Below, piece after piece: positions 16,634 to 53,347 of a stretch of DNA of 64,000 nucleotides. The position numbers and the translations under genes were made by a program. Origin of the DNA: Paragordius varius (taxonomy: Eukaryota; Animalia; Nematomorpha); the NCBI GenBank assembly GCA_964247055.1, contig OZ176059.1, positions 2,914,001 through 2,978,000 on the forward strand. Direction: 5' to 3'. The notes under the pieces were generated by a model. The model worked only from the letters and a program-made list of their open reading frames with translations, was not told where the DNA came from and made no database searches. Positions within the stretch are counted from its first letter, which is position 1. Each line of letters starts with the position of its first letter.

Positions 16634-19600
16634 CTATAAAACACAATTCAAAGTTCGATTCGTCATGGCTTGGATAAATATATTTAATCTTTTTTGAGCA
16701 AATTTGGTATCCAATGATTGGCTGGTAGTTAAGTTATCTGACCATCGTTCAACGTAATAGTTCTCATCGATAATCCATTGTGGCCTGATGTGTGAAATAA
16801 TGACAAAGATATAAAATAATTGAAGGAATTTATTCGCTAAATTTATTGGGATAATTATTTTGGCTTTATAATATTTATATACTTCTACGGATAAAAAAGG
16901 GAATGATCTATATATTTATAAAAATGGAAAATGCTGGCTTTGTGATCTGTTTCCGGAAAACCGGTAAACCCATTCAAATCCAAATATCAAAAAAATATAA
17001 TTATTAATAAATGCCCCGACAATAGCTTGGCCCCTTTTTTTAATTAGGTCCCCAGTTCGAGCCCATCCCGTGTAAAAATCGGTTTTTTTTGAAAACACAT
17101 GTCCACAAAAATCGTGTCTTTGAGACAATTTTCCGGAGAACGTGTTGGACCATTCAATTTCAAATATGATTTTTTTTCTTATTTTCGATTGTGCCGAAAA
17201 TAGTTTAATTTGGGCCTTAATCGCTACCCCTTAAAAGGCCATTTTTTTTAAAAAAAATTAAATCCACAAAAATAATTTTTTAAATTTATTTTTCGCCCAA
17301 GGTATGAGACCGTAAAAATTCAATAAGCATTCCAGTTCCTAAAAGGCAATAATTTTCGTCGTGCGTTTTTTTTATATTGCCTGCTGGGTAAGGAGATACC
17401 CGCTAAAAACTGCCCCGTCATATCGAAGTAGCGTTGGGGCTAAATTAAAACAGGCGATATGCCATAGGTGCTTAAAGTATCACCCGTAAAAGGCAAAAAT
17501 ATTAGTCGTGTGTTTTTTTGGAATTAATCGTTAATTAGGCCCTTAAGCCCAGAAAAATGCGCCACCATAGAATCATATTTCAGTTTTGAGTCAATTTTTC
17601 CAAAAATCAATTATAGCATATGGCATCAATTACGATTCCAATTATTCTTTGTAAAAAGGCAAATATTTTAATCGCTAGCCTCTGAATAGGAAGCTACCCG
17701 CCTAAAACTGCGCCACCATATCGAAATTTCGTGACTTTTGAGGCAAATTTTAGAAAACTTATTAAGCCATATGGATTCAATAAGGGCTTGAAATATTGCC
17801 CGTAATAAGGCAAAAATTAAAGTAAAGCGATTTTATTAAATTACCCCTTAATTAGGCCCTTACCCTGAAAAATGCGCCACCATAGTATGACTTTTTTGAT
17901 TTTAAGGCAATTTTTTGAAAATCCCACGAGAGCGTATGAAATCAATCATGATTCCAGGTATTACCCGTATTAAGACATTTAATCGAGCGTTTTTTTGTTT
18001 TGCCCCTGCTTAGGCTACCATTGTTAAACTGCGTAACCATATCGATACAGCATGCTTTTGGATCTTAATTCCAGAAAACCTATGAGACTATGTGAGTTCC
18101 AGGGCTCTAAATATTTATTGCCTTTTAGAAAAACAAATATTTTAGTATAAGGTGCCATTTTAATGAGTCGCTAAGTAAAGTTTTAGACCCTGAAAAATAT
18201 GCCGCCATAGAGCATTTTTTTAGTTTTGAAGCAATATTTCCAAGAACTTATAGGAACATATGGAATCCATGATAATTCCAGATATTCCCCATATTGAGGC
18301 AAAAATGCCCAATGCTTTTTTCTAGGTAAGGAGCAACCCGCCACAAACTGCGCACTATATAGAAATTGCGTTGTTTTGGAGGTAATTTACAGAAAATTTA
18401 GGAAGCCATATGAGGTTATCAAGGTAAAATTTAAGGTCAGGCCTTTGTTTTTTAGCCGTTAATTTGGGGCCTTTGTGCTCTAAAAATACGCCATCATAAA
18501 ACACTTATTTAGTGTTTTTTCGATTAACCCATGAAACGATGGTATCAAAGATGATTTTAAATAGCCCTATAAAGGCAAAAAATTTAACACACTTTTCCAT
18601 ATGTCTATGGATAGAGGTCTACCAGTTTAAAACTGAGGCGCCATTACAAAATTGGCTTGGTTTTGGAGCTAATTTTCAAAAAGTTAAGAAGCCATACGAG
18701 TTCCATAAAGGCTTTAAATGATACCCATAAAAAAGGTAAAAATCATAGTATAGCGGTTTTTCCGTTAGCCGTTAATTTGAAGCCTTTACACCAGTCAACA
18801 ATATAATAGTAATGCACGGTTTTAAAAATTCTTTGAAGCACCGTTTTTGAAAATCCTATGACATCATAACTATTATATAATATTTCGAAATAATCCACAT
18901 ATATGGATCACAATTTCGTTGAACCCTTTTTTCAGATAGCGGCTTCGCAGGCTCTAACTTACACTATCATGTATACCAATTTTTTTTATTTCCTATCATC
19001 AACGTAGCCCTACAATTGTTCATTTAGCAATACATTTAGAAAATGGGCAGCGTGTCTATTTTACAGTTTCTCCTAGTTTCTTATAATTAATTCTACTAAA
19101 CTTCTTTTTTTTAATATTTAACTTTGTTTTTTTAGTTTATCGAGCCTAAAACCTATCATTTGTTGGAAAGACCATTTTTAAAGATTTTTGAACCGTTTTA
19201 AATTCTGGACTTATTATTATTAGTTGCCAACATAAATATATATATATATATATTACAAAAAAATATTACTCAGAGTTGGTATAAATAGGACGCGTTCCAA
19301 TCACTAGGTACACCGCTGAAATTTCAAAAATGTTGGGACAATTGGCTTTGTGAAGGAATGTCACTTTATTGTTAACTGGTTTTGTGATACCTTATATAAC
19401 GACTGAGAGTTATTAATTATTCTGATGAAATATCACCTATTGTATTTTCGTTTTTTAATAAATTTCCAAACTTATGTACCATTATAACATAAAAAAAGGA
19501 ATATATTAAAGTTTCTAAAATCCAAAAATTACTCTTTGCACTTATTAGAAATTTTTTGAAAAAAACTAATTAAAAATATACAAATGGTCAATTATATGAT

Positions 19601-20018
19601 TGCTAAATTAGGTGAAAATTGATGTAAATTTATTTTCGGGACAATGAATTGTTTAAAACTTTATTTATTTTAAACAAAAATAACCATTGATAAATATATT
19701 AGTATAAGTATATAAAACATTAAAAAAGGGTTTACCAACTGATGCAAAACGGTTTTCGATGATTGCATAGATTTTTCTGACTCGCGTCGTTTCTTCCACA
19801 ACGTTGATAATTTTAATTTTCCAAACTATTGCATATAATATTATATGCATAGAGGCATATACGCATAAATAATTAAAAGATCCGTTATAAGTTCTTTAAA
19901 AAGGGTTTTTTTAAAGCTATAATACCAAAATTTGAACGACAAGCTTTGTACCACATCTTTTTGCGAACATCCCCGTCATTGATATGATGGGTAGGATGGA
20001 AAAATTCGGGACACCCCA
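16634..20018 (-). CDS. C345C/NTR-domain exons of the C3-like gene
   Basis: Four exons splice in frame: VGCPEFFH..KMWYKACRSNF|VWKIKIINVVEE..IYAIIENRFASV|GITKPVNNKVTFLHKANCPNIFEISAVYLVIG..NSE|PQWIIDENYYVERW..TLNCVL*. This follows the NTR pattern of C3/C4/C5. Confidence 0.88.
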
Positions 20019-22334: not shown

Positions 22335-22383
<49 letters not shown>

Positions 22384-25300
22384 CCATGTAATTTAAAAAA
22401 ACATTTATTTTAGAAATTTTATAAAAAAATAACCGATATTATTTTAAGTGAAAAAATAATAGTTTAAAATGTTGCCATTTACCAGCTTAAATAAAACCAG
22501 TAAGTACTAGGTAAAATTTGTAAAAAGACAATTTTTATTCAATGATATTTGTCAGTAAATACTGGTAAACATAGTACGTACTGGATAGTAAAACCAAAAT
22601 ATTTTTTTATTCAATACATAGCTAGTATATATTGGAAAAAACCTAGTTTTTAGCATATACTAGCTTTTATTCAATTGGCCCATGGTCTGCCTCGTTTTAA
22701 ATTGCCGTTCGGGTGAAAGAATCTAATTTTGTCAATTCAACCATTTGAGCGTTCAATGTGGCCCCAGTAACTGAAACGATTTGCTAGAGAAAAGAGGAGG
22801 ACATAGGTGAGATTGAAACATACTATGTATGCCTTTAATACTGATTAATGAGACATGAGTTGAGGATTTTCTTTCTTTTTCACATAATTTATATTCATGA
22901 GTTCGATTTGAGGGCCAACGTTCGCTAGCATATGAGAGGGCAGGGCGAAAGGCAATCGTGTAGATTTTGCCCTTGTTTGGGTTCAAAATGTGTTTGTGTT
23001 TCTTTATATACTTGAATTGATGGAATTTGTCCCAAGCTTGTGTTGTTATGGCGTTTTAACATTAATATTAGTTGCTATTTACCCAGGTAATTGTAATTGT
23101 TTACTATTTCGATGTTTATATGGGAAATAGGTGTATTTGTGTGGGACAGGACTATTTGTGTTTATATCTGGTGCTGCACAAGCTTTACAAACAAAATTTT
23201 CAATGGCTAATAAACTTTCTTTCAATTTGTGAGTTTTTGTGAACCCACAGTATTGGCATTTAGTGCATTTGATGAAATTAAGTTTCACTTCAGAGTGACA
23301 AATGAAACAAGGGAATTTTATTATAGGTACATGTGAGCCTGTATGATCGAGCCTTTGTCTATCTGTGGTAATTTTGAGTCCAAATTTTTCTAACATAGAT
23401 TCTAGAGATTATATTTATTGATGATTGCTGTTTCGCAGGTGGCCGTAGCATTATGTCGACGTAAAAAGGTAAGCTTGTTTTTATATTATCATTATTACAT
23501 CCATAATAATGATAAGTAGTAACGGGCTGAGGATAGAGCCCTGGTGTAGACCGACAGTCACTGGAAGTTGATTGGTATCTCCCATGGGAATCTCACGCAA
23601 CTAGTGGTGTTCTCATATAGTGAATTTATATTACCCATTCTGGTATTTCCTTTTTTCGTAACGCAAATGTGATCATGGACTGCGGGATGCAGTCAAATGC
23701 ACGGCTTTAATCGATATAAAGATGTGACATAAGGTTTTATTTTTAAAGTCTCTTGTAACTTTTAAAATGAATATGGCGTCAGAGGTGCTGACACCCTGTT
23801 GAAAACCGAATCGGGTGTCAATCGAGCAAAGCTGACGTATTTTCCTTTCTACTATAATTTTGAATAATTTTGTTGTATGTTCAAGTAATTTTAATGGTCT
23901 GTTGGAGGCGCAGTTAAGCATGTGCCTTTATTTTCACATATTGGAATATGATACTTAGGTTCCAGTCATTTGGGATTTTTTCCTCCATTATAATCATATT
24001 AAATAGCTCTGTGAAAAAAGAAATTCCTCAGGAATATTTTTTACATTTCAGTTTTGATTTCCGTAATTTGACATTTTTGCATGGATAAGCTCACATCTTC
24101 TGCAGTAATGATTGGGCGTGGCCCAACAACTGGAGGTAAGTTTGGTATTTCAAGAATGCTGGATATTTAGTGTATTTTCCATGTACTGTGTCAATACATT
24201 TTAACTATTAAGAGTGTCAGTAACTGTGTTGTTATTTATTTTTATCTTTTATGGCTTTCACCACCCGGATATCTTTTTTATTACTATTGGTTTTTTTAGT
24301 GTTTTGAAAACTTAAAAGTTTTTATTCCTTCAAGTTTTTTGGCCATTTCCAAGCATCTTTCATTCATTTTGTAAGCCATTATTATCTTCATTCTTTTTTA
24401 CACCATAATGTAAAAATGTGATATTTTTTATAATATCACATTAGACAATTGTTAACCTATCCATAAAAAATAAAATTTTTTCATTCCACTTATCACACAC
24501 AAATTTACCTTCGAAACATATGCAATTTTCGCCATCCATTTGAAATGGGACTATTGAATATCCCTGTTGGGATGTACAATACGTGTCGAGAAACGTTTCT
24601 TGTCTCGGCGTATAAAAGAATTCACAATTATTTTGAACAAACATTCCGTGCGTCCTAATTTGGATAATAGCTGGTTGTATTGATTTGACGATCGCAATTC
24701 GATGTATCAAAAATGAAACACTGAATGGTTGATTAGTTTTCAGCTAATAGTAAAAGCAAATATATTTTATATCTTGGGTGTGTAATTAATTATTGCAAAA
24801 AAGTCTAGATAAAATTAGAGGATCATTTTTAGTCAATAAACAATGGTTTGGATAACTTTTAGCTTTCTTTCGGCGGATGGAAAGAATTAAATATGAAAAT
24901 ATTTTAACTAAGGATATCAAACATTTTATTCTCAATAAAACAACATAATTTATAAATTACGATATTTTCTGGTTTTTGTACAATCAGGTTTTTTAAATAT
25001 ACATATTTATCCTTATATACCTCTCGTAAAAAGATGACCACCGAATTTTGCGTCGTAAAGATATGTTTTATGGGGGAGGCATTTGATGGTTTGGGCAAAA
25101 AATGAGATATTGGTGACATGCCAACAAAAAGGCCCACAGTTACTATAATTTGATCTGATGGATGGTATTCGTTTATATAACTATAAAAATAATGTATAAT
25201 ATAAAATAAACTATATAATATTAAGGTAATTTATAATAATCTCACCCAATGTATTTTTAATCGGATTAAAATTAATATTTATAGCATGGAAAATTGATAC

Positions 25301-28300
25301 AAATTTGTTATGGGATTAAAATATTGATAAAGGTTTATTTTATTTATGCAGGTTAATTTTTTAAATGTATATAAAGTATAAAGACTATTTAATTTTGAGG
25401 ATGAAAATATTTACATGATAGTATAAGTTAATTCATGAATCAATACCAGATAACATGTAAAACAAACTAAGTTATATTTTTCGCTTTTTACTGCTAATGC
25501 CCAATAATTCCCTTGCTTTATAAGCTATCTGTAAAAACTCGAAAAATTAGTAATGTATACTCATGCTGTAACTGTAAACACATAAATATACAGACTATCA
25601 CAGAATATAGCCAAAGTGAACATTAAATAATCACCCATATGTGTTATTATAGTATATTAGTTTTTATTCTACACTTTTAGTGGAGCGGTAGGGCAATCGC
25701 TTTAGCAGACTTTTACTGATGCGCTTAGCATTGATCTCCGCCAACGCTTTGTCCTGTTCTAACAATTGTAATTAATTGCACTGTCGTAAACAGGATTATG
25801 GCTTAAGGTGGCCATGATTTTTGGATATGAAAATCGCGATAGTTATTTCGATTCTAACTTTTGTAGTTGTAAACCATCTCAATAAAAGCATCATGAATTT
25901 TGTTCTCAATATCGATACAATATACCTATTTGGCCGCGGCTAACTTCGGTGCTCTTCTCATTTTTGAAAAATCACACGCTTTAAAGACATCATCAGTAAA
26001 ATATTTTCGCCTCCTATTATTGTCTACCAATCGCATTCTATTAACGAGTGAGACAAACAAATAATAAGAATAAAAGTTTGCAGTCATTATTACTCGGCCT
26101 AAAGAATTTTTTGCCGTGAGGGCGGTATAAAAGATAAAATTTTTACCATTTTCATACCCTACTTGCAGCGCTACTTAAATATTGTAGCCAAGAAATCGAA
26201 GAAAGATACATGTTTATATTGTAATTAATAGACAAAATCTTCTATACGTTAGATAAAGGTTTTGTAGTGAAATGTGAACATTTAAATAATTTATGAATAA
26301 ATGTAAATGCAAATGTAGTACACCATACAAGTTATATAAGTACCAATGTTTGTACAAGTATAATGATTATTATGATTTTAAATGTTTTAAATTTATCGTC
26401 TTTACTTATTAATACTAACGCTGTTTTATGGAAAATTCCAGAATCAATTTAATAAGCTTTGGAAAATATTTGCAGCACATGAAACGTGTTTTTGTAGTTA
26501 AAGGATTGCCGATAGATGATAATAATTGTAAATTCCTGGTCTATTCCGGTATCTACGCAAATAAGCTGGATCAATATTTGTTTCACAAGCCTTTAGACGA
26601 TTGTAATTGGGCCACCATATTGGAAGCGGGAACAAAAAATTTTAATTCGAAAATAAATGTTTTCAAAGCCCGATTCGATTTTGCTAAGTTGAAAAGATCC
26701 CCGGATGAATCATTTACCAAATATTTGCTACAGGTTAAGAAAACCGCTGTTAAGTTTAACGGTAGCGTTGTCGAGGAGTTCGGGATGCATTCATAAGCGG
26801 ATTGCAACTACAGAAGCTTGAATTAAAATTCCTAAACCGTTTTCCTGACACAAGAATTGATGGTCAACCGATAAGTTTGAATACCATATTCGATATTGCC
26901 ATGAATAATCATAAAAGGGCAAAAGAATGTTTCGCTGTGAGTAAACATCACCGTCACGCAATTGTGCAAACTCTACGACAGACGAAACACCATTAACCGA
27001 TGTCTCGCGCTGGGGAAACAAGGCCTTTACTGAATGGGGACATTTTCATTAGAAATGTACAAAACTACCCGGGTAATATCGGAGTCCATAGAAGCCGCCC
27101 GGATAAACGCGAGCCTTAATGGACTCTAGAGACAAGTATGCAGTACTATACCGGATCGTCCGTATCAATCATCAATGGTGTCATTTGCAAGGTTGGTAGT
27201 CAAAAACTGAAAGCGCTGAATGTTGACGTGGTACGCTATGGTGAAAACAAGGTGCACACATTGGACTAGATGGAGCTGTGGGTTAGAGTGGAAATCGCAA
27301 AGAACTATTATAATGCGTCGCGTATGAATAATGCCTACCTTTTTTGGTGGGATTGATTAAGATGCTCAACAATACACATTGCAATCATATTAATGTTAAC
27401 ATTTAAATTAATTTGATGATCCTTTTTTGTAAAGCAAAATTAGGATGTAAGGCTCCGCATATAAGTTATTATTAAAAGAATCTTAGTGCAAAAGTGTACC
27501 CTTGCCACTGCAACCAAAAATTAAGGATGAAGGATTAATAAGTTTAGTAAAAACATGTATTTAACTAGTAGACCCAAAGAAATCGACATGGGCTACCACC
27601 CCACTGTAAATATTAGTATTAAATTGGTTAAATTACAGTAACGAGACCTATTATAGGCCATTTCGGTATTTTAAGTAACTTAAAGTGGATTTAATATACA
27701 TGTGTGTTGCCATATGATATTTTCCATTTTATTAGTTATATATTCAATTGAAAACTGTATTTTTAATCCACAATTCATTTCATACATGGCTATTGACATG
27801 TTAATTATAACCCCTTTTAGCTATTTAAAATAACGTAAAGGCCAATAATTATTTTAGTTACTTAAATGATTCAATTATTTCGCTGTTAATATACAAAATT
27901 AAAATTACCACATACATATATTAACACAAATAATCATAAAATAAACTTCCTTTGGTGGTATTTTAAACCACCATAATTTATTTCACATTTTTAATAAGTT
28001 TAAGCAAGGGATTGAAACCACAAAGGCGTTTAGTTTCGATTCCGGTTTTAAGCCATTTTTATCACTGCTATTCAGAATTTTTAAATAAACGGAGGTGAAA
28101 TAAATAGTGTTTCATTGCAATTTCCAAACAATTATTCCAGATACATACTTTTTTGGTAAGACGGTTTTTTTTGTTTCAATTATTAAAGTTATGTTCGAAT
28201 AAGTCTTGTGGTGTCTTGGTCTCACAAAATAGGTTACGGTTTCAAATGCTTGTTTAAACCATCATTTAATTATGTTTCTTAAAAATTAATGAGAAAATAG

Positions 28301-33650: not shown

Positions 33651-33687
<37 letters not shown>

Positions 33688-42600: not shown

Positions 42601-45600
42601 TCTCCAAACGGTAATTGGAATGTAATGAAAGCTTGGTATGTGTGATTGTAGGTGAGCTTAATTTCTTCCCTGTTTATGCAAGTTGGTCTGTACGTTGAAA
42701 AACTTTTTACTGTTATATCCCACACACTGTTGCGATCCAATATTGGTATTTGCACATAGTTATGTACACCATCACTTTATAGATATCATATAAGAATACG
42801 TAACATTAATGTTGGTCAATTCACATTAATTTTGGTCGATTAGTAATACAGTAGCTTATAGGTAAAATGGAACAAATGGTTAAAATTAAAAGTTTTTCCT
42901 ATCTTACAACAATAAATTTGTTTATTTATGGACAATATTTGTTTTATACAATACGCTACTGTATTACCCATTGGCCCACATTCATGTGTATCTTGTATTA
43001 AAATTTTGTAGGATAAAATGGTGAGAAAAAATACATATGCCATTTTATTATACAGTATGAGTAAGTATATATTGCTAGAAAGTTATTAATTAATACCAAA
43101 TAGCATATGCAGCAAAGAGTATTGGCTAATAATAGTAAAAAGTGAAAATAACAATAAGCCAATATAACTGCATTATGTTGTATATGCTATTTGGCAATAA
43201 TAATTAGAAACTCTCTAGCAATGTATACTTAAACGTACTGTATATCAACATTATTTGGGAACAATGATTGCTTGAAATCCCTCTTCTTGGGAAATAATTA
43301 GCTTAAAATTTTTATACTAGAGAGAAAAATTTAGTGTAAGTAATTTTTTCGCTCGAAAAAACTATTTAGCCTTAATATGGCTACTTTGATATTTTAAAAT
43401 CTTTAAAATTTTGCGCTTTGGCCCTTAAGTTAATTAAATATTATCTCGCATGGTAAGCCCACATACACAAAGTTTATTATACAAATGTTTGCTTATGGTG
43501 AAAATGGATCTTAATATTTTTTTATTTTCTTCAATGTCATATTAAATAATTAAAAGATACGAATTCCGTCCGGTATTTAAAAAAGTGGTAGAAAAAATAT
43601 GTCAAGCGTTGATTAACGTTTTTAATTGTATTACAATATGAGACATTGCTAATTTTTATTAATTATAACCATATGGAAATTACAGAAGGGCAACATTATT
43701 GACTTAATGTTATTTTTTGCTTTCTACTGCTATTAGCCCTACTGCTATTAGCCAATAACAATGCTCTTTGGTGTATGCTACTGACAATATATAGAAAAAA
43801 TAGCAATGTATTTATTTAATTATACATTAATACATGAATTATATAAATTGTACTATTTGGGTTGGGTTTGTTGATTATAATGCTTACCGTGACTGCTTAC
43901 ACAAAAATGGTCAATATACCATTTACAATTTAAATTCACCCTTAAACAAATCAAATTCACCTTCGAACAATTCAAATTTACCCTTAAACAAATCAAATTC
44001 ACCTTCGAACAATTCAAATTCACCCTCAAATAAAATATATGTTATTTAGGATTAACAATTACCTGTATTTTATACATTTTTAAAAAATATAATACTGAAA
44101 AAAATAATAAACTATGCTATAACGATATATTTCATATTAATAATGAGTTATATTTGTTCGAAAACACATGATTTATTTTTAGGGTGAATTTGAATTGTTC
44201 AAAGTGTAAATGGTATATCTTAAAACATCACCTCGCATTGCGTAAAACAGGGGTGGCCAACATACGGCCCTCTGAAACATTTAGTGCGTTTGGAAATCCA
44301 TAATTTGCAAAAATATGGACACAAATGTTAAAGTTGGTAGGTAATTACTGAGCAAAGTTTCTGAATAAACTATTTAATTGAAACTAAAAAAAATTCTTAT
44401 ATTGTGTTTGCATTTTGCAGTTTTGTATATGAAATCTAATAAAGTTTTTATTGCCCTCAAGAATTTTAAATACGTGGCCTATGAGGCCATTTGTGTTGGA
44501 CAGCCCTAGTCTAAAACATCAAGTTTAAAGTCATATCCTTAAAGACAGGAAAGTAAACTGCGTTATCAAAGCATTTAAAACTTCATATAATTATCAATTA
44601 AACAAAGAATATTGTTTACTTTAAATAAAGTGATCCAAAATAGGGATTAGAATTTTGTGTTCTAATGTTTCTCCAATCATCTAAAATATAGAAATACATT
44701 TGTTAAGATAAAAATATTAAATATACTTAATATGGCCACAAATAAATATATGAGATATTGTATCTTAAAGTAATATAATTATAAAATATAGGTAAACTCT
44801 TCAAATCCAAATTATAAAAGTTTTCAAAAAAGAATATATATCGTTACATGACTCCTACATATCCAATTATTATTTAAATATATATAAATTCTCCCAGCCT
44901 TCATTTTAATTAAGGATATTTTAAAACATCTCAAAAAATTAATAACATAATATTTATTCTTAATAATGGATTTTTAGTATAAATTTAATATGTTTTTCAA
45001 CCGATTTTTAATTACGTTAAACTTATCCGTCTCTGAAGCATATTTATTAATTCACTGTAACAAATTTTTAAATAGAAGGCAGTTATTAAATTACCTATGT
45101 ACAGATCTGGACACGGTTTTCCCATAGTATTTGGGGTCCCTTCATAGTTTGGTAAATTTGACCTTAGAATCAAATCGGTTTCATTCAAAAAGCTTGTAAG
45201 GTTATTATAATTATCATTATTAACAAAATGATGTTGAGTCCAACCATTGTTCTATATAATAATTATGTTTACAGAGCAAATTTAATAATAATTGGGTTTA
45301 AACATGTAAAATGAATTAATTATTTTTCATCAAAAAAAGAAAGGACTTTTAGAATCCAAAATGAATATTTGTCAATTTTTATGTACTTTTAGTCATAAAA
45401 ACATACATATCTTTTTACAAAATTTTAATAAATCTAGGTCAGTTTATAATTATACAACCAGCTAATAGAGATTGCATTAACAAACTCGTTAAGCTCATTA
45501 AGTAGGTATTATGCGTAATAAACGGTGTTTACAAGCTTCATCCATACTAATATTTGATGCAAAGTTATCATAATTAAAATATAAATATTTTTTTTAACAA

Positions 45601-48600
45601 TTTTCAAAAGAAAAAGCCTCATCGTGCTACAATCCAAAACGATGATTTGTGTATCAGGTTTATAAAATATTTTTGCAGCAAAAACTGTTTTTGGAGTTAA
45701 CTGGGGCTAATTATACAGCTATCAAAATGTATTGGGCGATAAAAAATATGCCAAGCGTTTTCCAGATAATGCTATAAAATTAACGTTTAATAGGAGACGC
45801 ATAGAGTGTTTCTATTTATGGGCTTATTTAAATAAAGCGTTTTATAATAATATTACCTTAACAAGAATTACTTGACCATTTATAAATTAAATAGTCCTAT
45901 ACCTATAACTTTACAATACATATACCTTAAAAAAATAAATGTTAAAAGTTCTAATTTTACTGATGGTGTGGCCGAACATAGGGCTAACTCAAAAAGTGCT
46001 TCTACTATGTTTGGCGTATTCAACAAAAAATAAATAATATATTTTATTAATTTGTGAAAATTTTTTTTTTCCGTAAAATATTTTACGACTTTTGGGAAAC
46101 ATATATTTTTTTAAATTTTATTTTATATCCGACTGACCACAGGATCTGAAAAAAGTGTCTCGATATGTGACTTGCAATTATTTTCGTTGAATTGACCATA
46201 AAATATCAAGAATTACAAATTTTCTACCAAAACGTGGGTGCCCTTTCATATTGAAAATAATGATAGATGTGCAAAAACACATGATTTTACAGGCGGTGGA
46301 TCTAGTTAACTACAAAAGGTGAATCTACTATAATCGACACTAATACAGAAAATGTATGATAATATTTTTAGATATCAATAGCACTAAACCTTTCACGGAT
46401 AATTATTTCAGAAATACAATTTTTTTTCTGGAGGCTTTTTCATTGTCCAAGCTCAATAGTTTTGCTTTTATAGTAGAAAAATCTGCGACAATTTTTATCA
46501 TTTTGATAAATTTTGCGATAAAATTTTTATGACAACTCCATATTTTACACCGTCTAGAGCTTAACCAAGGATAAATGACTTGATTATGCTCGACGCATTA
46601 TAAATCAATAAAATATATGTGTTACAAAAATAAAATGGACCTATACATAGTTTGAAATAATGCTTCTAGGATAGTATTTTTATAACTTATTTTGAATCAT
46701 CTAATTTTTGAAAATCTGTTGAAAAGACAAACACTTTGCAACAAAAAATAGTTACATGGCATGCATGATTTAAGAAGTGTTTTGGCTCGCATTCATACGA
46801 TGTAAAGATTTCGACTTCATACAGAATTAACCTTAATTTGAACACAAATACGATTTGATATTAAATTTTTTTATGAGGTTAAAAATGTTTTAAATTTATA
46901 CAAATCATGTCATATATATGTACAAACTTATAATTAAATTGAATAAAACCGAGATAGATATAAAATAAAATGCTAAATTTTTTTGCCATAATTTTCTCAT
47001 ACTTTAAAAAAAACTTACCTCTATTATTAGATCAACTTCGGAATATGCCAAATGCCGTAAACTATCAAATCTGTTTTTCGCCATCCAAACAACAGCTGAA
47101 TATGGGTAACCTGTAAATTCTAATTCAAAGCTTGTATTTACTTGCGGTTTTTTAACTATAACGGCTTTAATCTATATTAAACATAATTTAATACTTTTTA
47201 GATGTTTTAAAGATTTAAATTGATGTTATAATGCAAGAATTTAAAATATGGCTACCACTGTTAATTAAAAATGGACCCCCCGTTTCATTGGGTCCCTTCC
47301 CTATTGTGGAAAAAATATATGATTTAATCGCATCATGACCCTTTTTTGATAAGTGATTAAATTTTCATGGCAATCTCAATTAATATTCGGTGTTTCTTAA
47401 ATAATATATATATATATATATATATATACATAATTTTGCTAGTAAAAAATAAATTATTTTTGGTTTATTATGAGATTATCAACAAGGTACTTCATTTAAA
47501 ATTGGGAAATGTGTGATGATCAAAATAAGCCATTTAGTGATTCACTGTTTATTTCAAAAAGGTTATTATGAGGGCAGGTCACTAGGTATTTAATAAGTAT
47601 ATAATGCCGTCTCTTTCAATCACTTATAATTTAGATATAAAAAGAAAAAAATAATAGTTTAACGAGTCATTTCTTAACAAAATGATATTTGTCTACAACT
47701 TATCTTGACATAAAACCCCTTATAGATTTCCAATAACTGACTAACCTATATAGGGTACCATTTTTTGGTGTTTTTTTTATCCCCGATTAAAGAGTCATCA
47801 CCGTTAACCGGGAAATAGTCAAATCAAAAGAATTTTAAAAAGTTGATATTTGGTCGTAAAATTATTTATTTTAAATAAATACCTTCTCGCAACTAAAATC
47901 ATCCCATTTCGTTTCGATATCTAACCAATCATACGCCATGGTGTCAAGATCATTACGAGTGTGGAAACCATAAACTATTACTCGAAATTTAGGATACATG
48001 TTAGGGAGTATTGGTATGTCAATTTGGGTTCGCTTGATTAACGTTTTATGATATGGTACATTGGGATTATTTAGTGACCATTGGTCGGTGAATAATGCCT
48101 CATTTATTCCAATTTCTTTGTGATATTTTATCATACCATTTACTAAAATCTGAATAAATGATAAATATATATTTAAAAAAATTTAAAATACAGCTTAACG
48201 TGTTACAAAATATAAAATATGGCATAAAACTTTATTAATATTTTAATCCATAGAATATCTAATTATCATAAATAATGATAGTTATTTTTTAAATCTTATA
48301 ACGTAATTTTTACATTTTTAACAACATAAATTTCCATTTAAGGTGTCAAATCAACTTGTTATTACTTTAAAAGACTACATTTATATGCGATACGATCGGT
48401 TATTATTTTTAACCGGCTAATAATCCTATATTCATATTTTTTGCATTGATTTTATATGATAAATTCTTACTGCATAATAAAGAGTAGGAGAATTGATTGT
48501 AAAATTGTCATTCATGTTATAAACGACATGAATGGAATGTACAGTATTAATTTTGGGGATTGTATCCATGGTTGGCCGCTGAATTCGAATAAAATTTGAT

Positions 48601-51600
48601 GGAATTGGCTTGATGATTCTACTTCTCGCTAAATTTATCTATTTTTTATATAATTTATTTATCATGTGTGCAACACCAAATGATGGGTGAATATCATTAA
48701 AAAAGTGTGTTTATATAATTTATAAATTTATATGTCCAGATTTTTTGCGTTTTTTAACTTCACCCTTATACATTAATTTTACCCTCGAAAATTTCAAATT
48801 TACCTTTGAACAGTTTAAATTCACCGTAAAATTAAATTATGTGTTTTATTCTAACTCACTTTCGATAGGAAATATCTACTTATGGAATAGTTTATCATTT
48901 TTTCTGTATATGTTAATTTCAACAAAGGTTCATTTTTATAATAGCTAAAAAATAGGTAATTTTTGATGTCCAAAAACATAATTTATTTTTAGGGAGATTT
49001 TGATATGTTTAAAGGTCAATTTGAGATGTTCAGGGGCTAAAATGAAATATAACGTTTATCTGTAATTGATATGTTGAAGGGAATTCAAGGTGTAAATGGT
49101 ATATATTAAAACAAGTCATTAATTATGGCCGTTACAAAATTGGTATTGTACTTTTTTGATTTTAACAGTTATGGTGATTGTATGATCCATGTATTGATCA
49201 AGAGCATTTTGTTGGCCCATAGGAATTTGGACATTAAAATAACCTTGTGTGTCTGTGATCGTTTCTTTTTTACGCGAAAACATCGCATATGTTTCACTGA
49301 TAGCCAATGCGTTCACATTTATTTCTGCATTAGGTAATGGACTATTGCCAATTGTTATTCTACCCTAAAGAGAATTACATAAAAAAGTCATAAAACATAA
49401 ACAAAAAACAGCCAAAAGAAAAAAAGTTAAAAAATGCAAGTTATTAAAAAATATTTAAAAATTTAAAACTTCCAATCCTTAAGAATGAAAAAAACTTTAA
49501 TTAACAAAAATACAGTACACCTTTTTATTGTTGGCCAATTGGTAATACAGTAGCGTATGGTATAAAAAGAATTTTGTCCACAATTAAATAAACGATTTTA
49601 ATGTTGTAAAATAGCAAAAATCCCATTTGTTGTTTTTCATCCATACGTTACTGTATTGTTATTTGGCCAAAATTAATGATAGTCGAAATCAAAAGAATAA
49701 GTATTCCAATGAATGGTTTTATGAAAATATATAAAATTTGCAAACTTTCACAATATACGGTATACCAGGAATGTAGAACGCTTGCATATCCTTATCAAAT
49801 ATTATATGATGATGAGAATCACTATTAATATTATTATTGGTATTTCTATCAACAACGGGGTTAAATTGAACCACATTTTTATAAACCCGTACGATTTGAT
49901 ACCCTGATTGGAATTCGGTTATGACAAATTTCATAAAAGTTACAATATTTGATAGATATGTCTTAGACATTGCTCGATACTGTAGATCACCTAAAAAATC
50001 ATCAGCCCTTAGATTAACAGTTATCTTTGAGCATTCCATCTACGTATATAACAAAAGTAATTTTATACAACAATTTCTTTTTGAAACATTAAGTATTCGA
50101 AAATTAACATTGTTTGTAGAATTCAAATATTGTAAATCAAAGAATTATTATAATCCTTGAAAACCTTAAAGGATCGTTCATGATTTATTTCAACCAATGT
50201 AGCGTTATTGACATGCACAACGCCAACACTCATTACAACATCTGCATGGAATGGATACCCGGATAAACATTGTTTTGGATTTACTGTATTATCTATAATT
50301 TTTACGTTTTTTAATGTCATGGTATAATATGCATTTATTTCCAGTGTAAGGGTATCGTGTATGCTTAAGGACTGTCGTTTAGTTAAATTCAAACGGATAT
50401 CAAAAATTGTGTCCACACTTGTACTCTGTTTAGTTTTCAGAGTGTTATAAGGAACTACAAGAAAGGAAAAGCGCGGGCTTGCTGATAAAAACTGTGTAAA
50501 ATTAGAAATAAAATATATAAAGAATTAATTTTTAATTAAATAAATTTGAAGGAAATTATATAGCTTATTTGTGTGGTTCCGAAATATGTAAATTGACACA
50601 AAGTACCGCTTTATCAAGCAAAAATTCTCTGACATATAAAAAGAAACCAACAAAACTTTATAAATTGTTCAATATTCCTTATTATTTTATGATATTTAAT
50701 AATCCTTAATTATTATTGATATCTTTAACCGTTTTGTATATAGTTTGTTAAAATAATATAATATTCTATTAAATATATCCTAAAAGCATGTAGTATAATG
50801 AACTACGCAAACATATATAAGTAAGTGCTTTTTTCCTTAATTACAAAATTAAAAATTAATTAAATAATAATTATATAGGATATAAACATTTTATATTCAA
50901 TCAAAAGAGTTAATATTTCAAATTATTAAAAAAATTTAACGTTAGGTCCGGTCCAAGCCTCTACATGCCAAACGCCATATTCACAATTAGCGGGTAGATT
51001 ATAATTAACCGTTACTAGTGAGGAACTACTATAATTTGTGGTATAATGTTGAACCGTATGGATAATTTTTTCCGTTGGGTCCTAGAAACGGAATAGTTAA
51101 GAATTTAAAACTGATGTTGTATTCGGTAGAATATTAATGCGACCAAATTATAAAAATTTTAAACATTAAAGTTTTAGCATTGGATAAAATTGGTGATAAT
51201 ACCAAACATACTCAAAAATAAATATGCCACCATATCTAGGGGGCATATCTGATTTATCAGATATCCAACTAGTATAATTTTAATTTTATTTATAAATTGA
51301 ATTTTTCTTATGGCTTTAAAGTCAGGATTCCAAGTATATTATTTTTTAACCACTAAATGCGCTACATATTAGGGGCAAATTACTAATTATCTTGGCTATT
51401 ATTTGAGTTAAATGAAATACTTTCTCCGTAATTTAATACAAAAGAGCAATATTATCCTAAAAATGGTTCAAAGTCAAATTTATGGACAATAAAACTTTTT
51501 TGTTGTGCAAACTTTTTTGTGAGATGATTTTATTACCTCTTTTAACGCAGTGAACATTTGTAACTTTTATAAAATAAAGTTTACATAATTTATAAGTTGT

Positions 51601-53347
51601 TAAAAAAATATAGCTGAATAAAAATTTTTCTCAAAGTTAAAGCCGATTACCCTCATTTTCCCTAATCAGCACAAAAAAATTCTTTTGTGCGCTGCGTAGC
51701 ACACAAAAAGAGGTTTGACTGTATAGTAATATTTGGATTTTTAATAAACATTTTAAGTTTTTACCTTGACATTTATGAGAATGGGAGAATCCAAAGCAAT
51801 GTAATGATCTTCAGTATTTATGGGTATGACAACAAACATTACTTAGAGAATAGATAAATAAAATTTATGGATTTAATAAATATATAAAAGTTGCCAAATT
51901 TGAATAAAAATAATTGGTCATTTTCGAAGGGATATTAAATTATATATATTTGATATTATTTATTTCATATCTAACATTTAAACACAATCCTCCACAATGA
52001 TACAGGTCGCTTATATTAAATTATTATCTATATTATATTTTGAACCGAGTCTAAAATATTTTATTGGTTTTTGAATCGTTTTTTAATTTGTGGGATTTTA
52101 TTAACAATAATTTTTTCATGATTAAGATATTCTTATAATTTTGGGATGATTGACAAATTCAGACGGAAATTTGAAAATATCTTTTTTTTTCACTTGTAAT
52201 TGGGTATATGAATGTTTTTTTAGTATTGTAATTACCGTCTCACTTAAACAATTCAATTTATAAATAATTAGTTAATATTATAATTTAATTTTTATGGATG
52301 GATTCAAATTAGCTTTATTAGGATCTCATGGGAAATGTATTTTTTAAATTATTATTGAAAAAAACAGAGGTGGTAAAATTAAAAAATTGAAATTAAACCA
52401 TTTAATAATTATTTTTGTTAATATATACAACTTTCAAACGCTAAATAAAAATTTTACCTGCATCGTTGGGATAATAAATGGCCTGACTTTTGTCAAATGT
52501 CACATTAAAAGTTATGGGTTTCGGACGTATCGGTATATAAATTTCTTCAATAAATTTGTATTTTATATTATCACAAAATAGTTTAATGATGGCCGTTGTC
52601 GTTAAAATTTTACGCGTTCCCCACTTCAAGTCTCGCGTGCCATCCCCTGATGAATAATGCGGATATGGTGTTTTATCGAAATGCTTATCAATCACATTTG
52701 TTTCAATGTGCGATTGAGATCTTGTTTTTAAGGGACTTGTTTTGGATGACTTTTCGTATCGAACCAAGACATCAGAACTTATTATAAATTCAACGGGAGA
52801 TACGGCTATAAAATATGGTGTGTATGGTATAAATACTTATATTAAAACAAAAAGCGTTATGAATTATTTTAAAACAAATATATAAAAAAATATTTGTTTA
52901 AACCAAAGTTTGAGGTTTATTTAAAAATTATATATAAAATAAAATTACCATTATATGATTCAGTTAGGATTTCTTTTGAAAATAGTGGGATATTCTCATG
53001 AGCAAAGTAGCCAAAAATTTGTATGTGGATTGTAATGTTGGGTGCTATGTCAGCAACGTGAATTAATAGTTGTTGTTTGCTATCCAAGATTAGGCTCTTA
53101 GGAGCCCATAACAAATATTTTTGACTAAATTAATAAAACACGTGACAAATATATTTAAATATAGTCGTCTGCTTCATGCAATAAAATAATGGAAAACAAT
53201 TATATCGTTTGGCTATTCTGCATTCAAAAATAAGCATGACATGAAATATTAAAATTAAATTAATGCTGTATTATACCTCCTAAACAATGGTATCTGGAAT
53301 AATAAGATAGCAATTGTAAATATTTCAAAAATGGATTTGTGTTTCAT
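16634..53347 (-). CDS. Divergent complement C3-like protein (A2M/TEP family with C345C/NTR domain), multi-exon, secreted
   Basis: Collinear exons with compatible phases where adjacent. Signal peptide 53347-53277 (MKHKSIFEIFTIAILLFQIPLFR). MG1 from 53124 (KYLLWAPKSLILD). MG2: VTFDKSQAIYYPND (~52470), LPANCEYGVWHVEA (~50970). 48142-47883: IPILPNMYPKFRVIVY..AYDWLDIE..C. 47171-47019. LNK 45251-45095. 44680-44620. MG6/7: ILDRNSVWDI..FQLPFGDV..VHNF (~42770-42535) and DKLVKWLHVSK (~42000). TED exons 30454-30398, 30336-30190, 30106-29989, 29890-29773, 29674-29518, 29155-28980 and from 28895. MG8 25180-25021 and 24743-24509 (IQPAIIQI..CEFFYTP..C..CICFE). C345C 20018-19926, 19825-19736, 19390-19270, 16784-16634 (WIIDENYYVERW..LNIFIQAM..C*). 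Exons between ~40.7 and 30.5 kb are only partly resolved. Confidence 0.88.
17230..18880. repeat. Degenerate tandem satellite, ~155-bp monomers alternating as a ~285-325-bp dimer
   Basis: The anchor GCGCCACCATA or variants occur at ~17410, 17559, 17710, 17874, 18031, 18201, 18350, 18489 and 18638. It is preceded alternately by AAAACT and AAAAAT. Confidence 0.8.
20365..22681 (-). mobile_element. PIF/Harbinger DNA transposon with ~700-bp inverted arms, internally deleted
   Basis: Termini GGGCCAATTGAATAAAAGCTA / TAGCTTTTATTCAATTGGCCC. Arms 20365-~21054 and ~21967-22681 are reverse complements. The core contains a Harbinger transposase fragment. No clear 3-bp TSD. Confidence 0.88.
21384..21878 (-). 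pseudogene. Harbinger (HARBI1/DDE_Tnp_4-type) transposase fragment
   Basis: Motifs IGCIDCSH, YINRKG, LLGDNGYPLSPWLLTPF and IIERVFGQMKTRFPIL are present. The PGSxHD motif is missing, and the N- and C-termini are truncated. Confidence 0.9.
22750..24420 (-). mobile_element. Degenerate RTE-type non-LTR retrotransposon (RT fragments plus Cys-rich insert)
   Basis: Broken frames encode PIITAEDVSLSMQK; LKLLEHTTKLFKIIVERKIR..FGFQQGVSTSDAIFIL (23673-23921); LEKFGLKI..FPCFICHSEV..IKCTKC..FVCKAC (23079-23396); KGKIYTIAFRPALSYASERW (22753-22986). Confidence 0.85.
25681..27400 (+). mobile_element. Ty3/Gypsy LTR-retrotransposon remnant (gag and decayed protease region)
   Basis: 26428-26796 encodes KARFDFAKLKRSPDESFTKYLLQVKKTA, resembling the Mag-type gag consensus. 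Frameshifted gag continuation at 26802-26996, followed by decayed protease-like text. Possible PBS TGGAGCGGTAGG at 25681. No paired LTR found. Confidence 0.65.
36847..39180 (+). CDS. Small heat-shock protein with three alpha-crystallin (HSP20) domains, 777 aa, intronless CDS
   Basis: Long open frame with raised GC. The TTG start of the track ORF lies upstream of an acceptor (tattacag at 36800), so the ATG at 36847 is preferred. ACD1 ~37762-37992 (LDMKEFLPQDIKVK..KEFNREFTLP..GVMTLEAP). ACD2 ~38503-38730 (LDLNGYDPDDIKV..REFNREYTLP..DGILTIE). ACD3 ~38950-39177 (FDMKDYMPEDIKVK..REFSREYVIP..EGVLTVE). Confidence 0.93.
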   Translation: MNSSSFKPLNNGHSNNNNNTNGYNGSKNHRHTSTLTIPVNINNHGNSIKHGGGAGANYKNGNNTMKQPVNDDGILAHELERMNVKMNELRKSFDDLTSDGQRTSNGRNNDRDGIIGVKIQTKQPPTQSNATSTTAERYYPSARNSSTVNGKSNNGGWSNGNKYFSDNERVIGDVGNGGKHTTASSFATMPRLKQSTTNTYNGLTGAQNNDFGNEFDREIQDFRRNFEDFGRKSTTAYSSASHTDDRHSIKVIHNTDVGKSGRNRSNRDILFGTPDSGLGSSSAANTTLGMGTNIFDGELTGSSNKSLYQVTLDMKEFLPQDIKVKIVDNKLLRVEARMDARTDTGGTVQKEFNREFTLPSNVNTDALVSRIDNYGVMTLEAPYLVSGTNDTVERSSFGRGDGMTDHNISHNKSHNHDFSPNNKYSNSTSRSYSTTKNEFTKPSFNFNKPNKSFFDDAYNNSYHYNPPSTFNNWASGGPASTMPRRKYSLTNNGYGGFGHRKMPSFLDDFPHTPPLWDDFNNHRTDNKFVPSAGMIGTTASAALGLPKSSGDVPFRLKLDLNGYDPDDIKVNVCDNSLLRVQARHEAKGVNGTVSREFNREYTLPAHVDPDTIHSSFSRDGILTIESVATGPAAQERSYIPVKHNNTYKGDSLQNDYTSNKKVFSSDTHHFKDNNSNNNNDAHHITSSSLDNSGITRGTKETPFRLTFDMKDYMPEDIKVKVLGSKLRVEAKHVEESLERGSIIREFSREYVIPTNVEAESLRSSLSNEGVLTVESVL
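42830..42978. mobile_element. Small palindromic MITE (second copy 49531-49670)
   Basis: GGCCAAT.GGTAATACAGTAGCGTAT ... ATA.G.TACTGTATT termini and interior are shared between 42830-42978 (reverse orientation) and 49531-49670. Confidence 0.7.
43051..43242. mobile_element. TA-flanked palindromic MITE (~190 bp)
   Basis: TA|CAGTATGAGTAAGTATATATTGCTAG..CCAAATAGCATATGCAGCA is mirrored by TGTTGTATATGCTATTTGG..CTAGCAATGTATACTTAAACGTACTG|TA. Confidence 0.75.
43915..44217. mobile_element. MITE family A copy
   Basis: TATACCATTTACA ... TGTAAATGGTATA termini, with about five 21-bp repeats on the left and one on the right. Degenerate copies at ~2430-2680, ~41746-41972 and ~48755-49103. Confidence 0.85.
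44248..44508. mobile_element. hAT-type MITE (~260 bp)
   Basis: CAGGGGTGGCCAACA ... TGTTGGACAGCCCTA. The 8-bp flanks GCGTAAAA / GTCTAAAA match at 6/8, consistent with a decayed TSD. Same end family as 5936-7538. Confidence 0.75.

What the first reader, a model, noticed from the sequence alone, without database searches (positions are those of the whole stretch)
16634..53347. Highly divergent complement C3-like gene with a full C345C/NTR tail, invisible in the ORF track
Short exons scattered over 36.7 kb assemble in the domain order signal-MG1..MG7-TED-MG8-anchor-C345C (seen in sequence). Within the thioester-protein family the C345C domain marks the C3/C4/C5 branch, not A2M, CD109 or insect TEPs (established). 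Identity to known C3s looks very low. C3 has a patchy invertebrate distribution and is absent from nematodes and insects, so a C3-type gene in this AT-rich, minute-intron genome could extend or complicate that distribution (inference; depends on the taxon).
Basis: partly seen in the sequence, partly recalled or inferred. Interest (0 to 1): 0.75.

Follow-up and report, generated by a model that had tools for sequence, protein, structure and literature searches.

The report
Divergent C3-like thioester-family gene
This AT-rich animal genome, probably a horsehair worm's, holds a real but extremely diverged gene of the family that includes complement C3. It very likely ends in the tail domain typical of C3, but it lacks the reactive thioester, the anaphylatoxin domain and any visible activating partners, so it looks like a remodelled C3-like relic, not a working complement C3.

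Summary
A real multi-exon gene of the thioester-protein (A2M/TEP/C3) superfamily lies on the minus strand at window 53347-16634.

- **Family:** four exons give weak, colinear Pfam hits (MG1, MG2, A2M_BRD, A2M). The rest was invisible to every exon-wise HMM, PDB, word and 1.84-billion-protein search.
- **C345C tail:** likely (about 0.7), not shown.
  - The four 3' exons (20018-16634) look coding by GC step and codon usage.
  - They join exon 24743-24509 and each other through GT-AG sites in compatible phases, and they keep four of the six NTR cysteines.
  - Added to a netrin/sFRP NTR profile, exons D and E pull a C3 C345C chain out of the PDB (E 0.06-0.35). It is absent without them or with control segments.
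  - No single exon hits the NTR HMM. The joined model was left out by rule, and no RNA was found.
- **Missing C3 features:** the thioester site is replaced, and I found no ANATO domain and no factor B or MASP-type locus. Gastropods have a comparable C3-like form.
- **Taxon:** probably a hairworm (earlier notes, partly checked). I found no report of a C3-like gene in that phylum.

An HSP20 gene with several crystallin domains (three Pfam stretches) is nested in the largest intron.

The parts
53277..53347 (-). Exon 1: start codon and hydrophobic signal-like peptide; donor G|gtataa in phase 2
   Evidence: Direct reading.
52949..53124 (-). Exon 2: first half of MG1
   Evidence: Pfam MG1 E 1e-4, 22.9 bits against a cut-off of 23.6. 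Phase-compatible with exons 1 and 3.
52458..52805 (-). Exon 3: second half of MG1 with a long insert, and the start of MG2
   Evidence: Reading. No Pfam hit. Codon-usage score in the top 4% of background.
50929..51081 (-). MG2 exon (stop-free segment; ends approximate)
   Evidence: Pfam MG2 E 0.13, model positions 47-80.
49122..50524 (-). MG3 and MG4 exons, in stop-free segments 50126-50524, 49722-50039 and 49122-49364 (ends approximate)
   Evidence: Reading. Only hits to generic beta-sandwich families, CarboxypepD_reg and DUF6795. Codon usage is exon-like.
47007..48638 (-). MG5 and MG6a exons, in segments 48435-48638, 47874-48182 and 47007-47171
   Evidence: Pfam A2M_BRD E 0.006-0.008 on 47874-48182; the rest by reading.
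45015..45251 (-). Linker exon ending in a Cys-Pro, at the place where C3 has its processing site and A2M has the start of its bait
   Evidence: Reading only. No ANATO or LDLa hit on any ORF between here and 42800.
42000..43302 (-). MG6b and MG7 exons, in segments 43207-43302, 42531-42776 and 42000-42335
   Evidence: Pfam A2M E 0.043 on 42531-42776. Reading and splice phases.
31390..31649 (-). Start of the thioester domain. The position of the GCGEQ motif is occupied by other residues, with no Cys and no Gln.
Evidence: No TED_complement hit.
28704..30376 (-). Further TED exons, in segments 30185-30376, 29731-29898, 29504-29674, 28977-29156 and 28704-28895
   Evidence: Reading of TED-like helix motifs in the right order. 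No Pfam hit.
25021..26174 (-). End of CUB and first part of MG8, in segments 25929-26174 and about 25021-25180
   Evidence: Reading. Codon usage in the top 2%. No A2M_recep hit.
24509..24743 (-). Exon A: end of MG8 and the cysteine-rich anchor; donor G|gtaaat in phase 1
   Evidence: Reading. Single copy in the genome. No relatives found.
19926..20018 (-). Exon B: completes the C-x-C-x4-C anchor and holds NTR cysteines 1 and 2
   Evidence: Splice phase. GC 0.42 against 0.25-0.29 beside it. Codon usage in the top 3%. Same intron site and phase as the genome's own netrin NTR.
19736..19825 (-). Exon C: first strands of the NTR-like domain
   Evidence: Phase-compatible. Codon usage in the top 0.4%.
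19270..19390 (-). Exon D: NTR cysteine 3 followed by the Y-L-V-I-G motif
   Evidence: hhalign against the own netrin/sFRP NTR profile, P 0.008, at columns 5-21. Smith-Waterman against the own sFRP, shuffle p 0.008.
16634..16784 (-). Exon E: last strand and helix of the NTR-like domain, the final cysteine, and the stop codon at 16634-16636
   Evidence: Phase 2+1 join. hhalign P 0.12 at columns 33-45. With exon D it brings a C3 C345C chain into a PDB profile search (controls).

Best explanation
This is one intact, secreted, about 1,500-codon gene of the thioester-protein superfamily. Its order is MG1-MG6, linker, MG6b-MG7, CUB/TED, MG8 and a cysteine anchor. The last coding part is an NTR/C345C-type domain encoded by four exons that are spliced to the anchor exon across a 4.5-kb intron filled with transposons.

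That architecture puts it with the C3/C4/C5 branch. But it has lost the thioester, it has no recognisable anaphylatoxin domain, and the genome shows no factor B or MASP-type partner. It therefore cannot tag targets covalently or feed a convertase cascade.

The likeliest way of working (inferred, not shown) is that of thioester-less relatives such as C5 or the gastropod type I C3-like proteins. It would be a secreted scaffold that changes shape after a cut in the linker between MG6a and MG6b. It would then bind partners non-covalently, with the NTR tail as the protein-binding module.
For: Shown:
- Colinear Pfam hits MG1, MG2, A2M_BRD and A2M on separate exons.
- Long stop-free exons in 27% GC DNA.
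- GT-AG sites and compatible phases at all eight junctions examined.
- Exons B-E have GC 0.34-0.42 against 0.20-0.27 in adjoining introns.
- Exons B-E each lie in the top 0.4-4% of 478 background segments by codon usage, like the confident exons.
- The read-through tail after exon A has intron-like GC, 0.26.
- Splicing A to B gives the spacing C-x-C-x4-C. From my memory of human C3 and C4, that is their anchor spacing.
- MAFFT, unguided, places exon D and exon E on consecutive parts of the genome's netrin and sFRP NTR domains.
- hhalign gives P 0.008 and 0.12, in colinear order.
- NTR profiles that include D and E hit a C3 C345C chain (6xzu_B) at rank 2 in the PDB, E 0.063 and 0.35. The profile without them, and one with two intronic control segments instead, do not.
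- Exon B has no start codon of its own in its open stretch.
- The thioester site is replaced.
- No ANATO was found, and no Sushi-VWA-trypsin locus.

Precedent: gastropod type I C3-like proteins lost the ANATO domain, the cleavage site and the thioester (PMC8960428).
Against: - No exon gives an NTR, TED_complement or A2M_recep hit.
- Genome scans with those models skip the window.
- phmmer of exons A, D and E against the PDB finds no C3, C4 or C5.
- Mini-HMMs built from the genome's own NTRs rank exon D 122nd and exon E 548th of 1,975 window segments.
- The C3 hit in the profile test is weak and involves one PDB chain only.
- No RNA run holds the locus, so no splice is seen.
- The 10-kb intron with a nested gene, and the 4.5-kb and 2.5-kb introns, are unusual in a genome noted for tiny introns.
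- The function is inferred only.
Confidence: 0.6

Rival explanations
1. The thioester-family gene ends just after exon A. The donor at 24509 is not used, translation runs on 22 codons to the stop at 24444, and the protein is an insect-TEP/CD109-like molecule with a short cysteine tail. Exons B-E are then part of some other, unannotated transcript, or chance open frames.
For: - Two of the genome's canonical TEP genes end in short cysteine-rich tails of this kind.
- The read-through also yields a further cysteine six residues after C-x-C.
- No NTR HMM hit.
- No RNA.
Against: - The donor is a perfect G|gtaaat, like the gene's other donors.
- The tail has intron-like GC, 0.26.
- B-E score as coding with the same codon usage as the gene, each in the top 0.4-4%.
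- B-E are in phase with exon A and with each other, lack a start of their own, and carry NTR-like features at colinear positions.
Confidence: 0.15
2. The locus is a decaying or recently dead relic of a C3-like gene. The architecture is as described, but the gene is no longer expressed or useful. That would explain the extreme divergence, the lost thioester and the introns invaded by transposons.
For: - Half of the domains are invisible to family models.
- No likeness to the four canonical paralogues.
- No RNA holder.
- Introns hold high-copy repeats, a DDE transposase remnant and a nested gene.
Against: - About 25 exons stay open in DNA where a stop is expected every 12 codons or so.
- All eight splice junctions examined keep GT-AG and phase.
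- The two missing NTR cysteines would be lost as a pair, since by my recollection of C3 they bond to each other.
- One allele in run X3 differs in exon A by a 6-base, in-frame gap (table 8).
Confidence: 0.15
3. The NTR tail is not inherited from the C3/C4/C5 ancestor. It was added to a TEP gene in this lineage by exon shuffling from a netrin- or sFRP-type gene, so the likeness to C3 is convergent.
For: - The intron after the second NTR cysteine (C-R-x-[D/N]-F, phase 1) lies at the same site and phase as in the genome's own netrin gene.
- Exon D's best single match is the genome's own sFRP.
- There is no ANATO domain to link the gene to C3.
Against: - The anchor spacing and the position of the domain directly after the anchor are those of C3/C4/C5.
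- Adding exons D and E to the NTR profile lowers the netrin score and brings in C3.
- No close netrin or sFRP likeness was found.
- A shared phase-1 intron may simply be an old feature of the module.
Confidence: 0.08

Closest known systems
Complement C3/C4/C5 and invertebrate C3-like proteins
   Same: - The order of MG domains, linker, CUB/TED and MG8.
- A cysteine anchor with C-x-C-x4-C spacing.
- A C-terminal domain of about 150 residues with NTR-type cysteines and motifs.
- A signal peptide.
   Different: - No ANATO domain found.
- No GCGEQ thioester motif.
- No basic processing site in the linker exon that I could identify.
- Two of the six C345C cysteines are missing.
- No factor B or MASP-type gene in the genome scans.
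- Sequence too diverged for any exon-wise family hit in the C-terminal half.
Gastropod type I C3-like proteins (PMC8960428)
   Same: [quoted passage not shown] That is the same set of losses as here.
   Different: It belongs to another phylum (Mollusca). Its sequences are recognisable as C3-like by ordinary tools. I could not compare sequences here.
Insect-type TEPs, CD109 and A2M, including the genome's four canonical TEP genes at C10:2.65 Mb, C4:5.44 Mb, C3:2.06 Mb and C1:11.13 Mb
   Same: The same superfamily, with MG, BRD and A2M hits. Two of the paralogues also have a cysteine-rich C-terminal tail.
   Different: - Those genes give strong TED_complement and A2M_recep hits, and the window gene gives none.
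- None of them has an NTR exon nearby.
- No BLAST or small-HMM likeness to the window gene.
NTR modules of netrin and secreted frizzled-related protein
   Same: The cysteine followed by the Y-L-x-x-G motif, a later hydrophobic strand ending in Trp, a terminal cysteine, and one shared phase-1 intron site with the genome's own netrin.
   Different: Here the module follows a TEP body, not laminin-type EGF repeats or a frizzled domain. Likeness to the own netrin and sFRP is weak.

Membership tests
Thioester-protein superfamily (A2M/TEP/C3) | N-terminal macroglobulin domains (MG1, MG2, bait-region domain, A2M domain) in fixed order | tested here: met
   Pfam MG1 E 1e-4, MG2 E 0.13, A2M_BRD E 0.006 and A2M E 0.043 on separate exons, in gene order. 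Each is below the curated cut-off; the case rests on the joint, ordered occurrence.
Thioester-protein superfamily (A2M/TEP/C3) | Thioester domain (TED) and receptor-binding/MG8 domain | tested here: inconclusive
   No TED_complement or A2M_recep hit on any exon or in the genome scans. TED-like and MG8-like motifs can be read in the right order.
Thioester-protein superfamily (A2M/TEP/C3) | GCGEQ thioester motif (absent in some accepted members such as C5) | tested here: not met
   The colinear position in exon 31390-31566 has neither Cys nor Gln.
Complement C3/C4/C5 (C3-like) branch | C-terminal C345C/NTR domain after the anchor (PMC9363628, PMC8960428) | tested here: inconclusive
   For:
- Splice phases, codon usage and the cysteine pattern.
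- hhalign P 0.008 and 0.12.
- A C3 C345C chain at E 0.063 and 0.35, only when exons D and E are in the profile (against 77, 80).

Against:
- No Pfam NTR hit on single exons.
- No phmmer hit to C3, C4 or C5.

The joined domain was not searched.
Complement C3/C4/C5 (C3-like) branch | Anaphylatoxin (ANATO) domain between MG6a and MG6b | tested here: not met
   No ANATO hit on ten ORFs between 46860 and 42843, and none in the whole genome. Published C3-like proteins without a detectable ANATO exist (PMC8960428, PMC9363628).
Complement C3/C4/C5 (C3-like) branch | Alpha-beta processing site (basic R-x-x-R) after the linker cysteine | tested here: inconclusive
   None in the identified linker exon 45015-45251. 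Exons between 45015 and 43302 are not resolved.
Complement C3/C4/C5 (C3-like) branch | Placement with C3/C4/C5 in a TEP-family tree | not testable with these tools
   No relative was retrieved, and the spliced model was not to be joined.
Complement system (functional) | Partner proteases: factor B (Sushi-VWA-trypsin) or MASP (CUB-EGF-CUB-Sushi-trypsin) | tested here: not met
   In the genome scans for VWA, Sushi and trypsin, no trypsin hit lies within about 50 kb of a VWA hit or close to any Sushi cluster. The one VWA+Sushi locus (C1:3.874-3.878 Mb) has the Sushi after the VWA. These scans are lower bounds.
CD109 / insect-type TEP | Protein ends shortly after the cysteine signature, or with a GPI signal; no NTR | tested here: inconclusive
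   Possible only if the donor at 24509 is unused. The read-through tail has intron-like composition. There is no hydrophobic C-terminal signal.
Macroglobulin complement-related (MCR) | LDL-receptor class A domain in place of the bait or ANATO | tested here: not met
   No LDLa hit on the ORFs of the linker region. Small exons could have been missed.

The most novel reading that the evidence does not exclude
A horsehair worm keeps a C3-descended protein that has shed the thioester, the anaphylatoxin domain and every convertase partner, yet keeps its MG ring and C345C tail under selection, with highly variable alleles in the anchor exon. The parasite would use it for a new purpose. One possibility is a secreted decoy or binder that acts on the TEP-based immunity of the insect host in whose body cavity the worm grows. 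It would also show that the ancestor of nematodes and hairworms still had a C3-like gene.
Probability: 0.1. Interest if true: 0.75.

Novelty: new member of a known kind. Interest (0 to 1): 0.5.

Why it matters
Published surveys list C3-like genes as lost from nematodes, hexapods, crustaceans, flatworms and annelids (PMC8960428). I found no paper that mentions thioester proteins in Nematomorpha.

If the C345C tail is confirmed and the genome is a hairworm's, two things follow:
- The common ancestor of nematodes and hairworms still had a C3-type gene, so its loss in nematodes came later.
- This would be a second, independent case (after gastropods) of a C3-like protein surviving without thioester, anaphylatoxin or convertase partners. 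That raises the question of what such proteins do.

It is also a practical warning. A 1,500-codon gene can be invisible to ORF lists and to exon-wise HMM scans in AT-rich genomes.

Tried and rejected
Searches for relatives:
- Word search with exon A: nothing.
- Word search with the own netrin NTR exon: nothing.
- Search of 1.84 billion representative proteins with exon A: only two repetitive, spurious hits. I therefore had no C3 or TEP sequences in hand for local profiles or a tree.
- phmmer of exons A, D and E against the PDB: no family hit.
- ESM Atlas look-alikes of exon E: uninformative for a 49-residue piece.

Comparisons within the genome:
- tblastn of 25 window exons against the four canonical TEP loci: noise, no colinearity.
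- 29 small HMMs built from paralogue exon pairs: no signal.
- Mini-HMMs from the own netrin and sFRP NTRs: exons C, D and E not ranked high.
- An alignment for the N-terminal half of the NTR looked misaligned, so I did not use it. The same goes for a five-row anchor profile.

Structure: complex prediction with exons B, C, D and E as four chains gave no answer (score 0.01). This counts neither for nor against.

Reads:
- No RNA holder.
- The 'organism B' run carries identical sequence in every unique (non-repeat) piece listed, so an exon-versus-intron conservation test was impossible.

Readings I considered and rejected:
- That the 807-codon ORF in the big intron is a transposon. It is an HSP20 gene.
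- That the C8 and C5 NTR hits are C3 genes. They are two netrins and one sFRP.
Full report
**Setting.** The window is G000:C10:2914001-2978000 of a 110.6-Mb assembly in 44 contigs, with 23-36% GC.
- Earlier notes of this scan call the animal a probable horsehair worm, because its mitochondrial genes are full of perfect coding palindromes. That trait is published for Nematomorpha (PMC6649704).
- I checked this only in part. The contig with cox1 (C44) carries hairpins with arms of 97 and 131 bases and no loop.

**The gene is real and belongs to the thioester-protein superfamily.**
- On the minus strand, an ATG at 53347 opens a hydrophobic signal-like peptide. Exons follow whose translations read like MG1 to MG7.
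- Searched one exon at a time by reference, four exons hit four models of this family, in gene order:
  - MG1: E 1e-4, 22.9 bits against a cut-off of 23.6.
  - MG2: E 0.13.
  - A2M_BRD: E 0.006-0.008.
  - A2M: E 0.043.
- By my estimate about a dozen of Pfam's 24,736 models belong to this family. The chance that a random peptide hits one of them at such E-values is then about 1e-8 to 1e-4 per exon. Four hits in the right order are beyond chance.
- With 27% GC I expect a stop about every 12 codons, yet exons stay open for 80-130 codons.
- The three 5' junctions keep GT-AG and phase.

**How diverged it is.**
- The genome has four canonical TEP genes that give strong TED_complement and A2M_recep hits: C10:2.65 Mb, C4:5.44 Mb, C3:2.06 Mb and C1:11.13 Mb.
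- The window gene is not found by those scans.
- It has no paralogue of exon A.
- It shows no colinear likeness to the four genes, either by tblastn or by 29 small HMMs built from them.
- Exon A finds nothing true in 1.84 billion representative proteins, in the word index or in the PDB.

**The C-terminal half.**
- TED-like, CUB-like and MG8-like exons can be read in order between 31649 and 24509, but none gives a family hit.
- At the place of the GCGEQ motif, the flanks are colinear with the A2M motif region as I recall it, but there is neither the cysteine nor the glutamine. The protein cannot form a thioester.

**The C345C question.** Exon A (24743-24509) ends in C-x-C and a perfect donor, G|gtaaat.

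*Splicing:*
- Four further exons follow: B (20018-19926), C (19825-19736), D (19390-19270) and E (16784-16634, ending in the stop).
- All have ag| acceptors and G|gta donors. The phases are 1, 1, 1 and 2, and they fit.
- Splicing A to B gives C-x-C-x4-C. From memory, that is the anchor spacing of human C3 and C4.

*Coding character:*
- The exons have GC 0.34-0.42 against 0.20-0.27 in adjoining introns.
- Each lies in the top 0.4-4% of 478 background stop-free segments in a codon-usage score trained on the confident exons. Those exons score the same when each is left out in turn.
- The 22-codon read-through after exon A has intron-like GC, 0.26.
- Exon B's open stretch has no methionine, so it needs an upstream exon.

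*NTR features:*
- B to E hold four cysteines at the places of NTR cysteines 1, 2, 3 and 6.
- From memory of C3, the two missing cysteines bond to each other.
- Exon D has a cysteine followed by Y-L-V-I-G. Exon E has a strand ending in Trp and a last cysteine three residues before the stop.

**Objective tests of the NTR reading gave a mixed picture.**

*Negative:*
- No Pfam NTR hit on single exons.
- The genome-wide NTR scan found only two netrins and one sFRP.
- phmmer of D and E against the PDB found nothing.
- Mini-HMMs of the own NTRs did not rank them.

*Positive:*
- Exon D against the own sFRP: shuffle p 0.008.
- hhalign against the own NTR profile: P 0.008 for D at columns 5-21 and P 0.12 for E at columns 33-45, so colinear.
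- MAFFT placed D and E, unguided, on consecutive parts of netrin and sFRP.
- The intron after the second cysteine sits at the same site and phase as in the own netrin gene.

*Differential test against the PDB (177,635 distinct sequences):*

| Profile | Netrin-1 hit | C3 C345C chain 6xzu_B |
|---|---|---|
| Netrin + sFRP only | yes | not found |
| Two netrins + sFRP + exons D, E | yes | rank 2, E 0.063 |
| One netrin + sFRP + exons D, E | yes | rank 2, E 0.35 |
| Netrin + sFRP + two intronic control segments | yes | not found |

This evidence is weak, but it is specific to the inclusion of exons D and E and points to C345C. I put the tail at about 0.7.

The joined protein was not built, searched, folded or put in a tree.

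**What argues against a working C3.**
- No ANATO hit on ten ORFs of the linker region, and none in the genome.
- No basic processing site in the identified linker exon.
- Scans for VWA, Sushi and trypsin show no locus that combines them as factor B or MASP do. These scans are lower bounds.
[quoted passage not shown] Biomphalaria C3-like proteins show no ANATO to software (PMC9363628).

**RNA and population data.**
- No RNA run holds the locus.
- Laid contigs show that the 20000-24400 intron is made of high-copy repeats.
- The run labelled organism B is identical to the window in every unique (non-repeat) piece listed.
- One sample (X3) has two half-depth contigs over 24504-24658 of exon A. One has 10 mismatches. 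The other has 3 mismatches and a gap of 6 bases, which is in frame.

**Introns.**
- The A-B intron holds a DDE_Tnp_4 transposase remnant (E 6e-19), followed by a stretch that reads like a reverse-transcriptase remnant (no Pfam hit).
- The D-E intron holds a repeat that is also present in introns of two other TEP loci.
- The 10-kb intron between MG7 and the TED holds an 807-codon gene on the other strand. It gives three Pfam HSP20/alpha-crystallin stretches (E 4e-45).

**Verdict.** This is a real, very diverged, thioester-less TEP-family gene, probably with a C345C-type tail. It is best filed as a C3-like relic in a phylum where I found none reported (PMC8960428). Splicing, fold and phylogeny remain to be shown.

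Noticed in passing
window 36757-39180 (+): An intronless 807-codon ORF, nested on the opposite strand in the largest intron of the TEP gene, encodes a protein with three matched Pfam HSP20/alpha-crystallin stretches (E 3.6e-45). It is a multi-domain small heat-shock protein, not a transposon.
   Followed up: partly
window 24504-24658 (exon A), run X3: Two contigs at half depth cover this coding stretch. One has 10 mismatches in 155 bases. The other has 3 mismatches and a 6-base (in-frame) gap. Neighbouring pieces differ by 1-2%. This may be two strongly diverged alleles of the anchor loop.
   Followed up: no
G000 C10:2.65 Mb, C4:5.44 Mb, C3:2.06 Mb, C1:11.13 Mb (L006-L019, L021-L033): Four canonical TEP genes. 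The C10 and C4 genes are close paralogues with an A2M-like end. The C3 gene ends in a short cysteine-rich tail. The C1 gene ends in a cysteine signature plus a hydrophobic stretch that looks like a GPI signal (CD109-like).
   Followed up: partly
G000 C8:1.310 Mb and 1.359 Mb (L001, L002, L004, L005); C5:3.465 Mb (L003): Two nearly identical netrin gene copies 48 kb apart, each with laminin-type EGF followed by an NTR. There is also one secreted frizzled-related gene with an NTR. These are the only NTR hits in the genome scan.
   Followed up: partly
window 16919-18500; also L015 and C3:2.06 Mb introns: A repeat family whose translation is 50-80% identical between the last intron of this gene and introns of two other TEP loci. 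In the C4 locus it lies as three tandem copies.
   Followed up: no
window 20000-24400: The intron between the anchor exon and the NTR exons is built of high-copy repeats, with depth up to thousands of times the single-copy level. It includes a DDE_Tnp_4 (Harbinger-type) transposase remnant at 21387-21884 and a stretch at 22756-23927 that reads like a reverse-transcriptase remnant (no Pfam hit).
   Followed up: partly
G000 C1:3874394-3878004 (-): The only locus that combines VWA and Sushi hits has the Sushi after the VWA and no trypsin hit nearby, so it is not built like factor B. Its identity is open.
   Followed up: no
L034 (G000 C44:5980-10320): The mitochondrial contig carries zero-loop hairpins with arms of 131 and 97 bases, and a run of 49-52-base palindromic units next to cox1. 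cox1 itself has six in-frame TGA codons, as expected for the invertebrate mitochondrial code.
   Followed up: partly
window 26500-27400: A stretch with GC 0.37-0.47 inside the CUB/MG8 part of the gene has open frames on both strands (for example 26428-26796 on +) and no Pfam hit. It is unclear whether it is an exon, a repeat or another nested gene.
   Followed up: no
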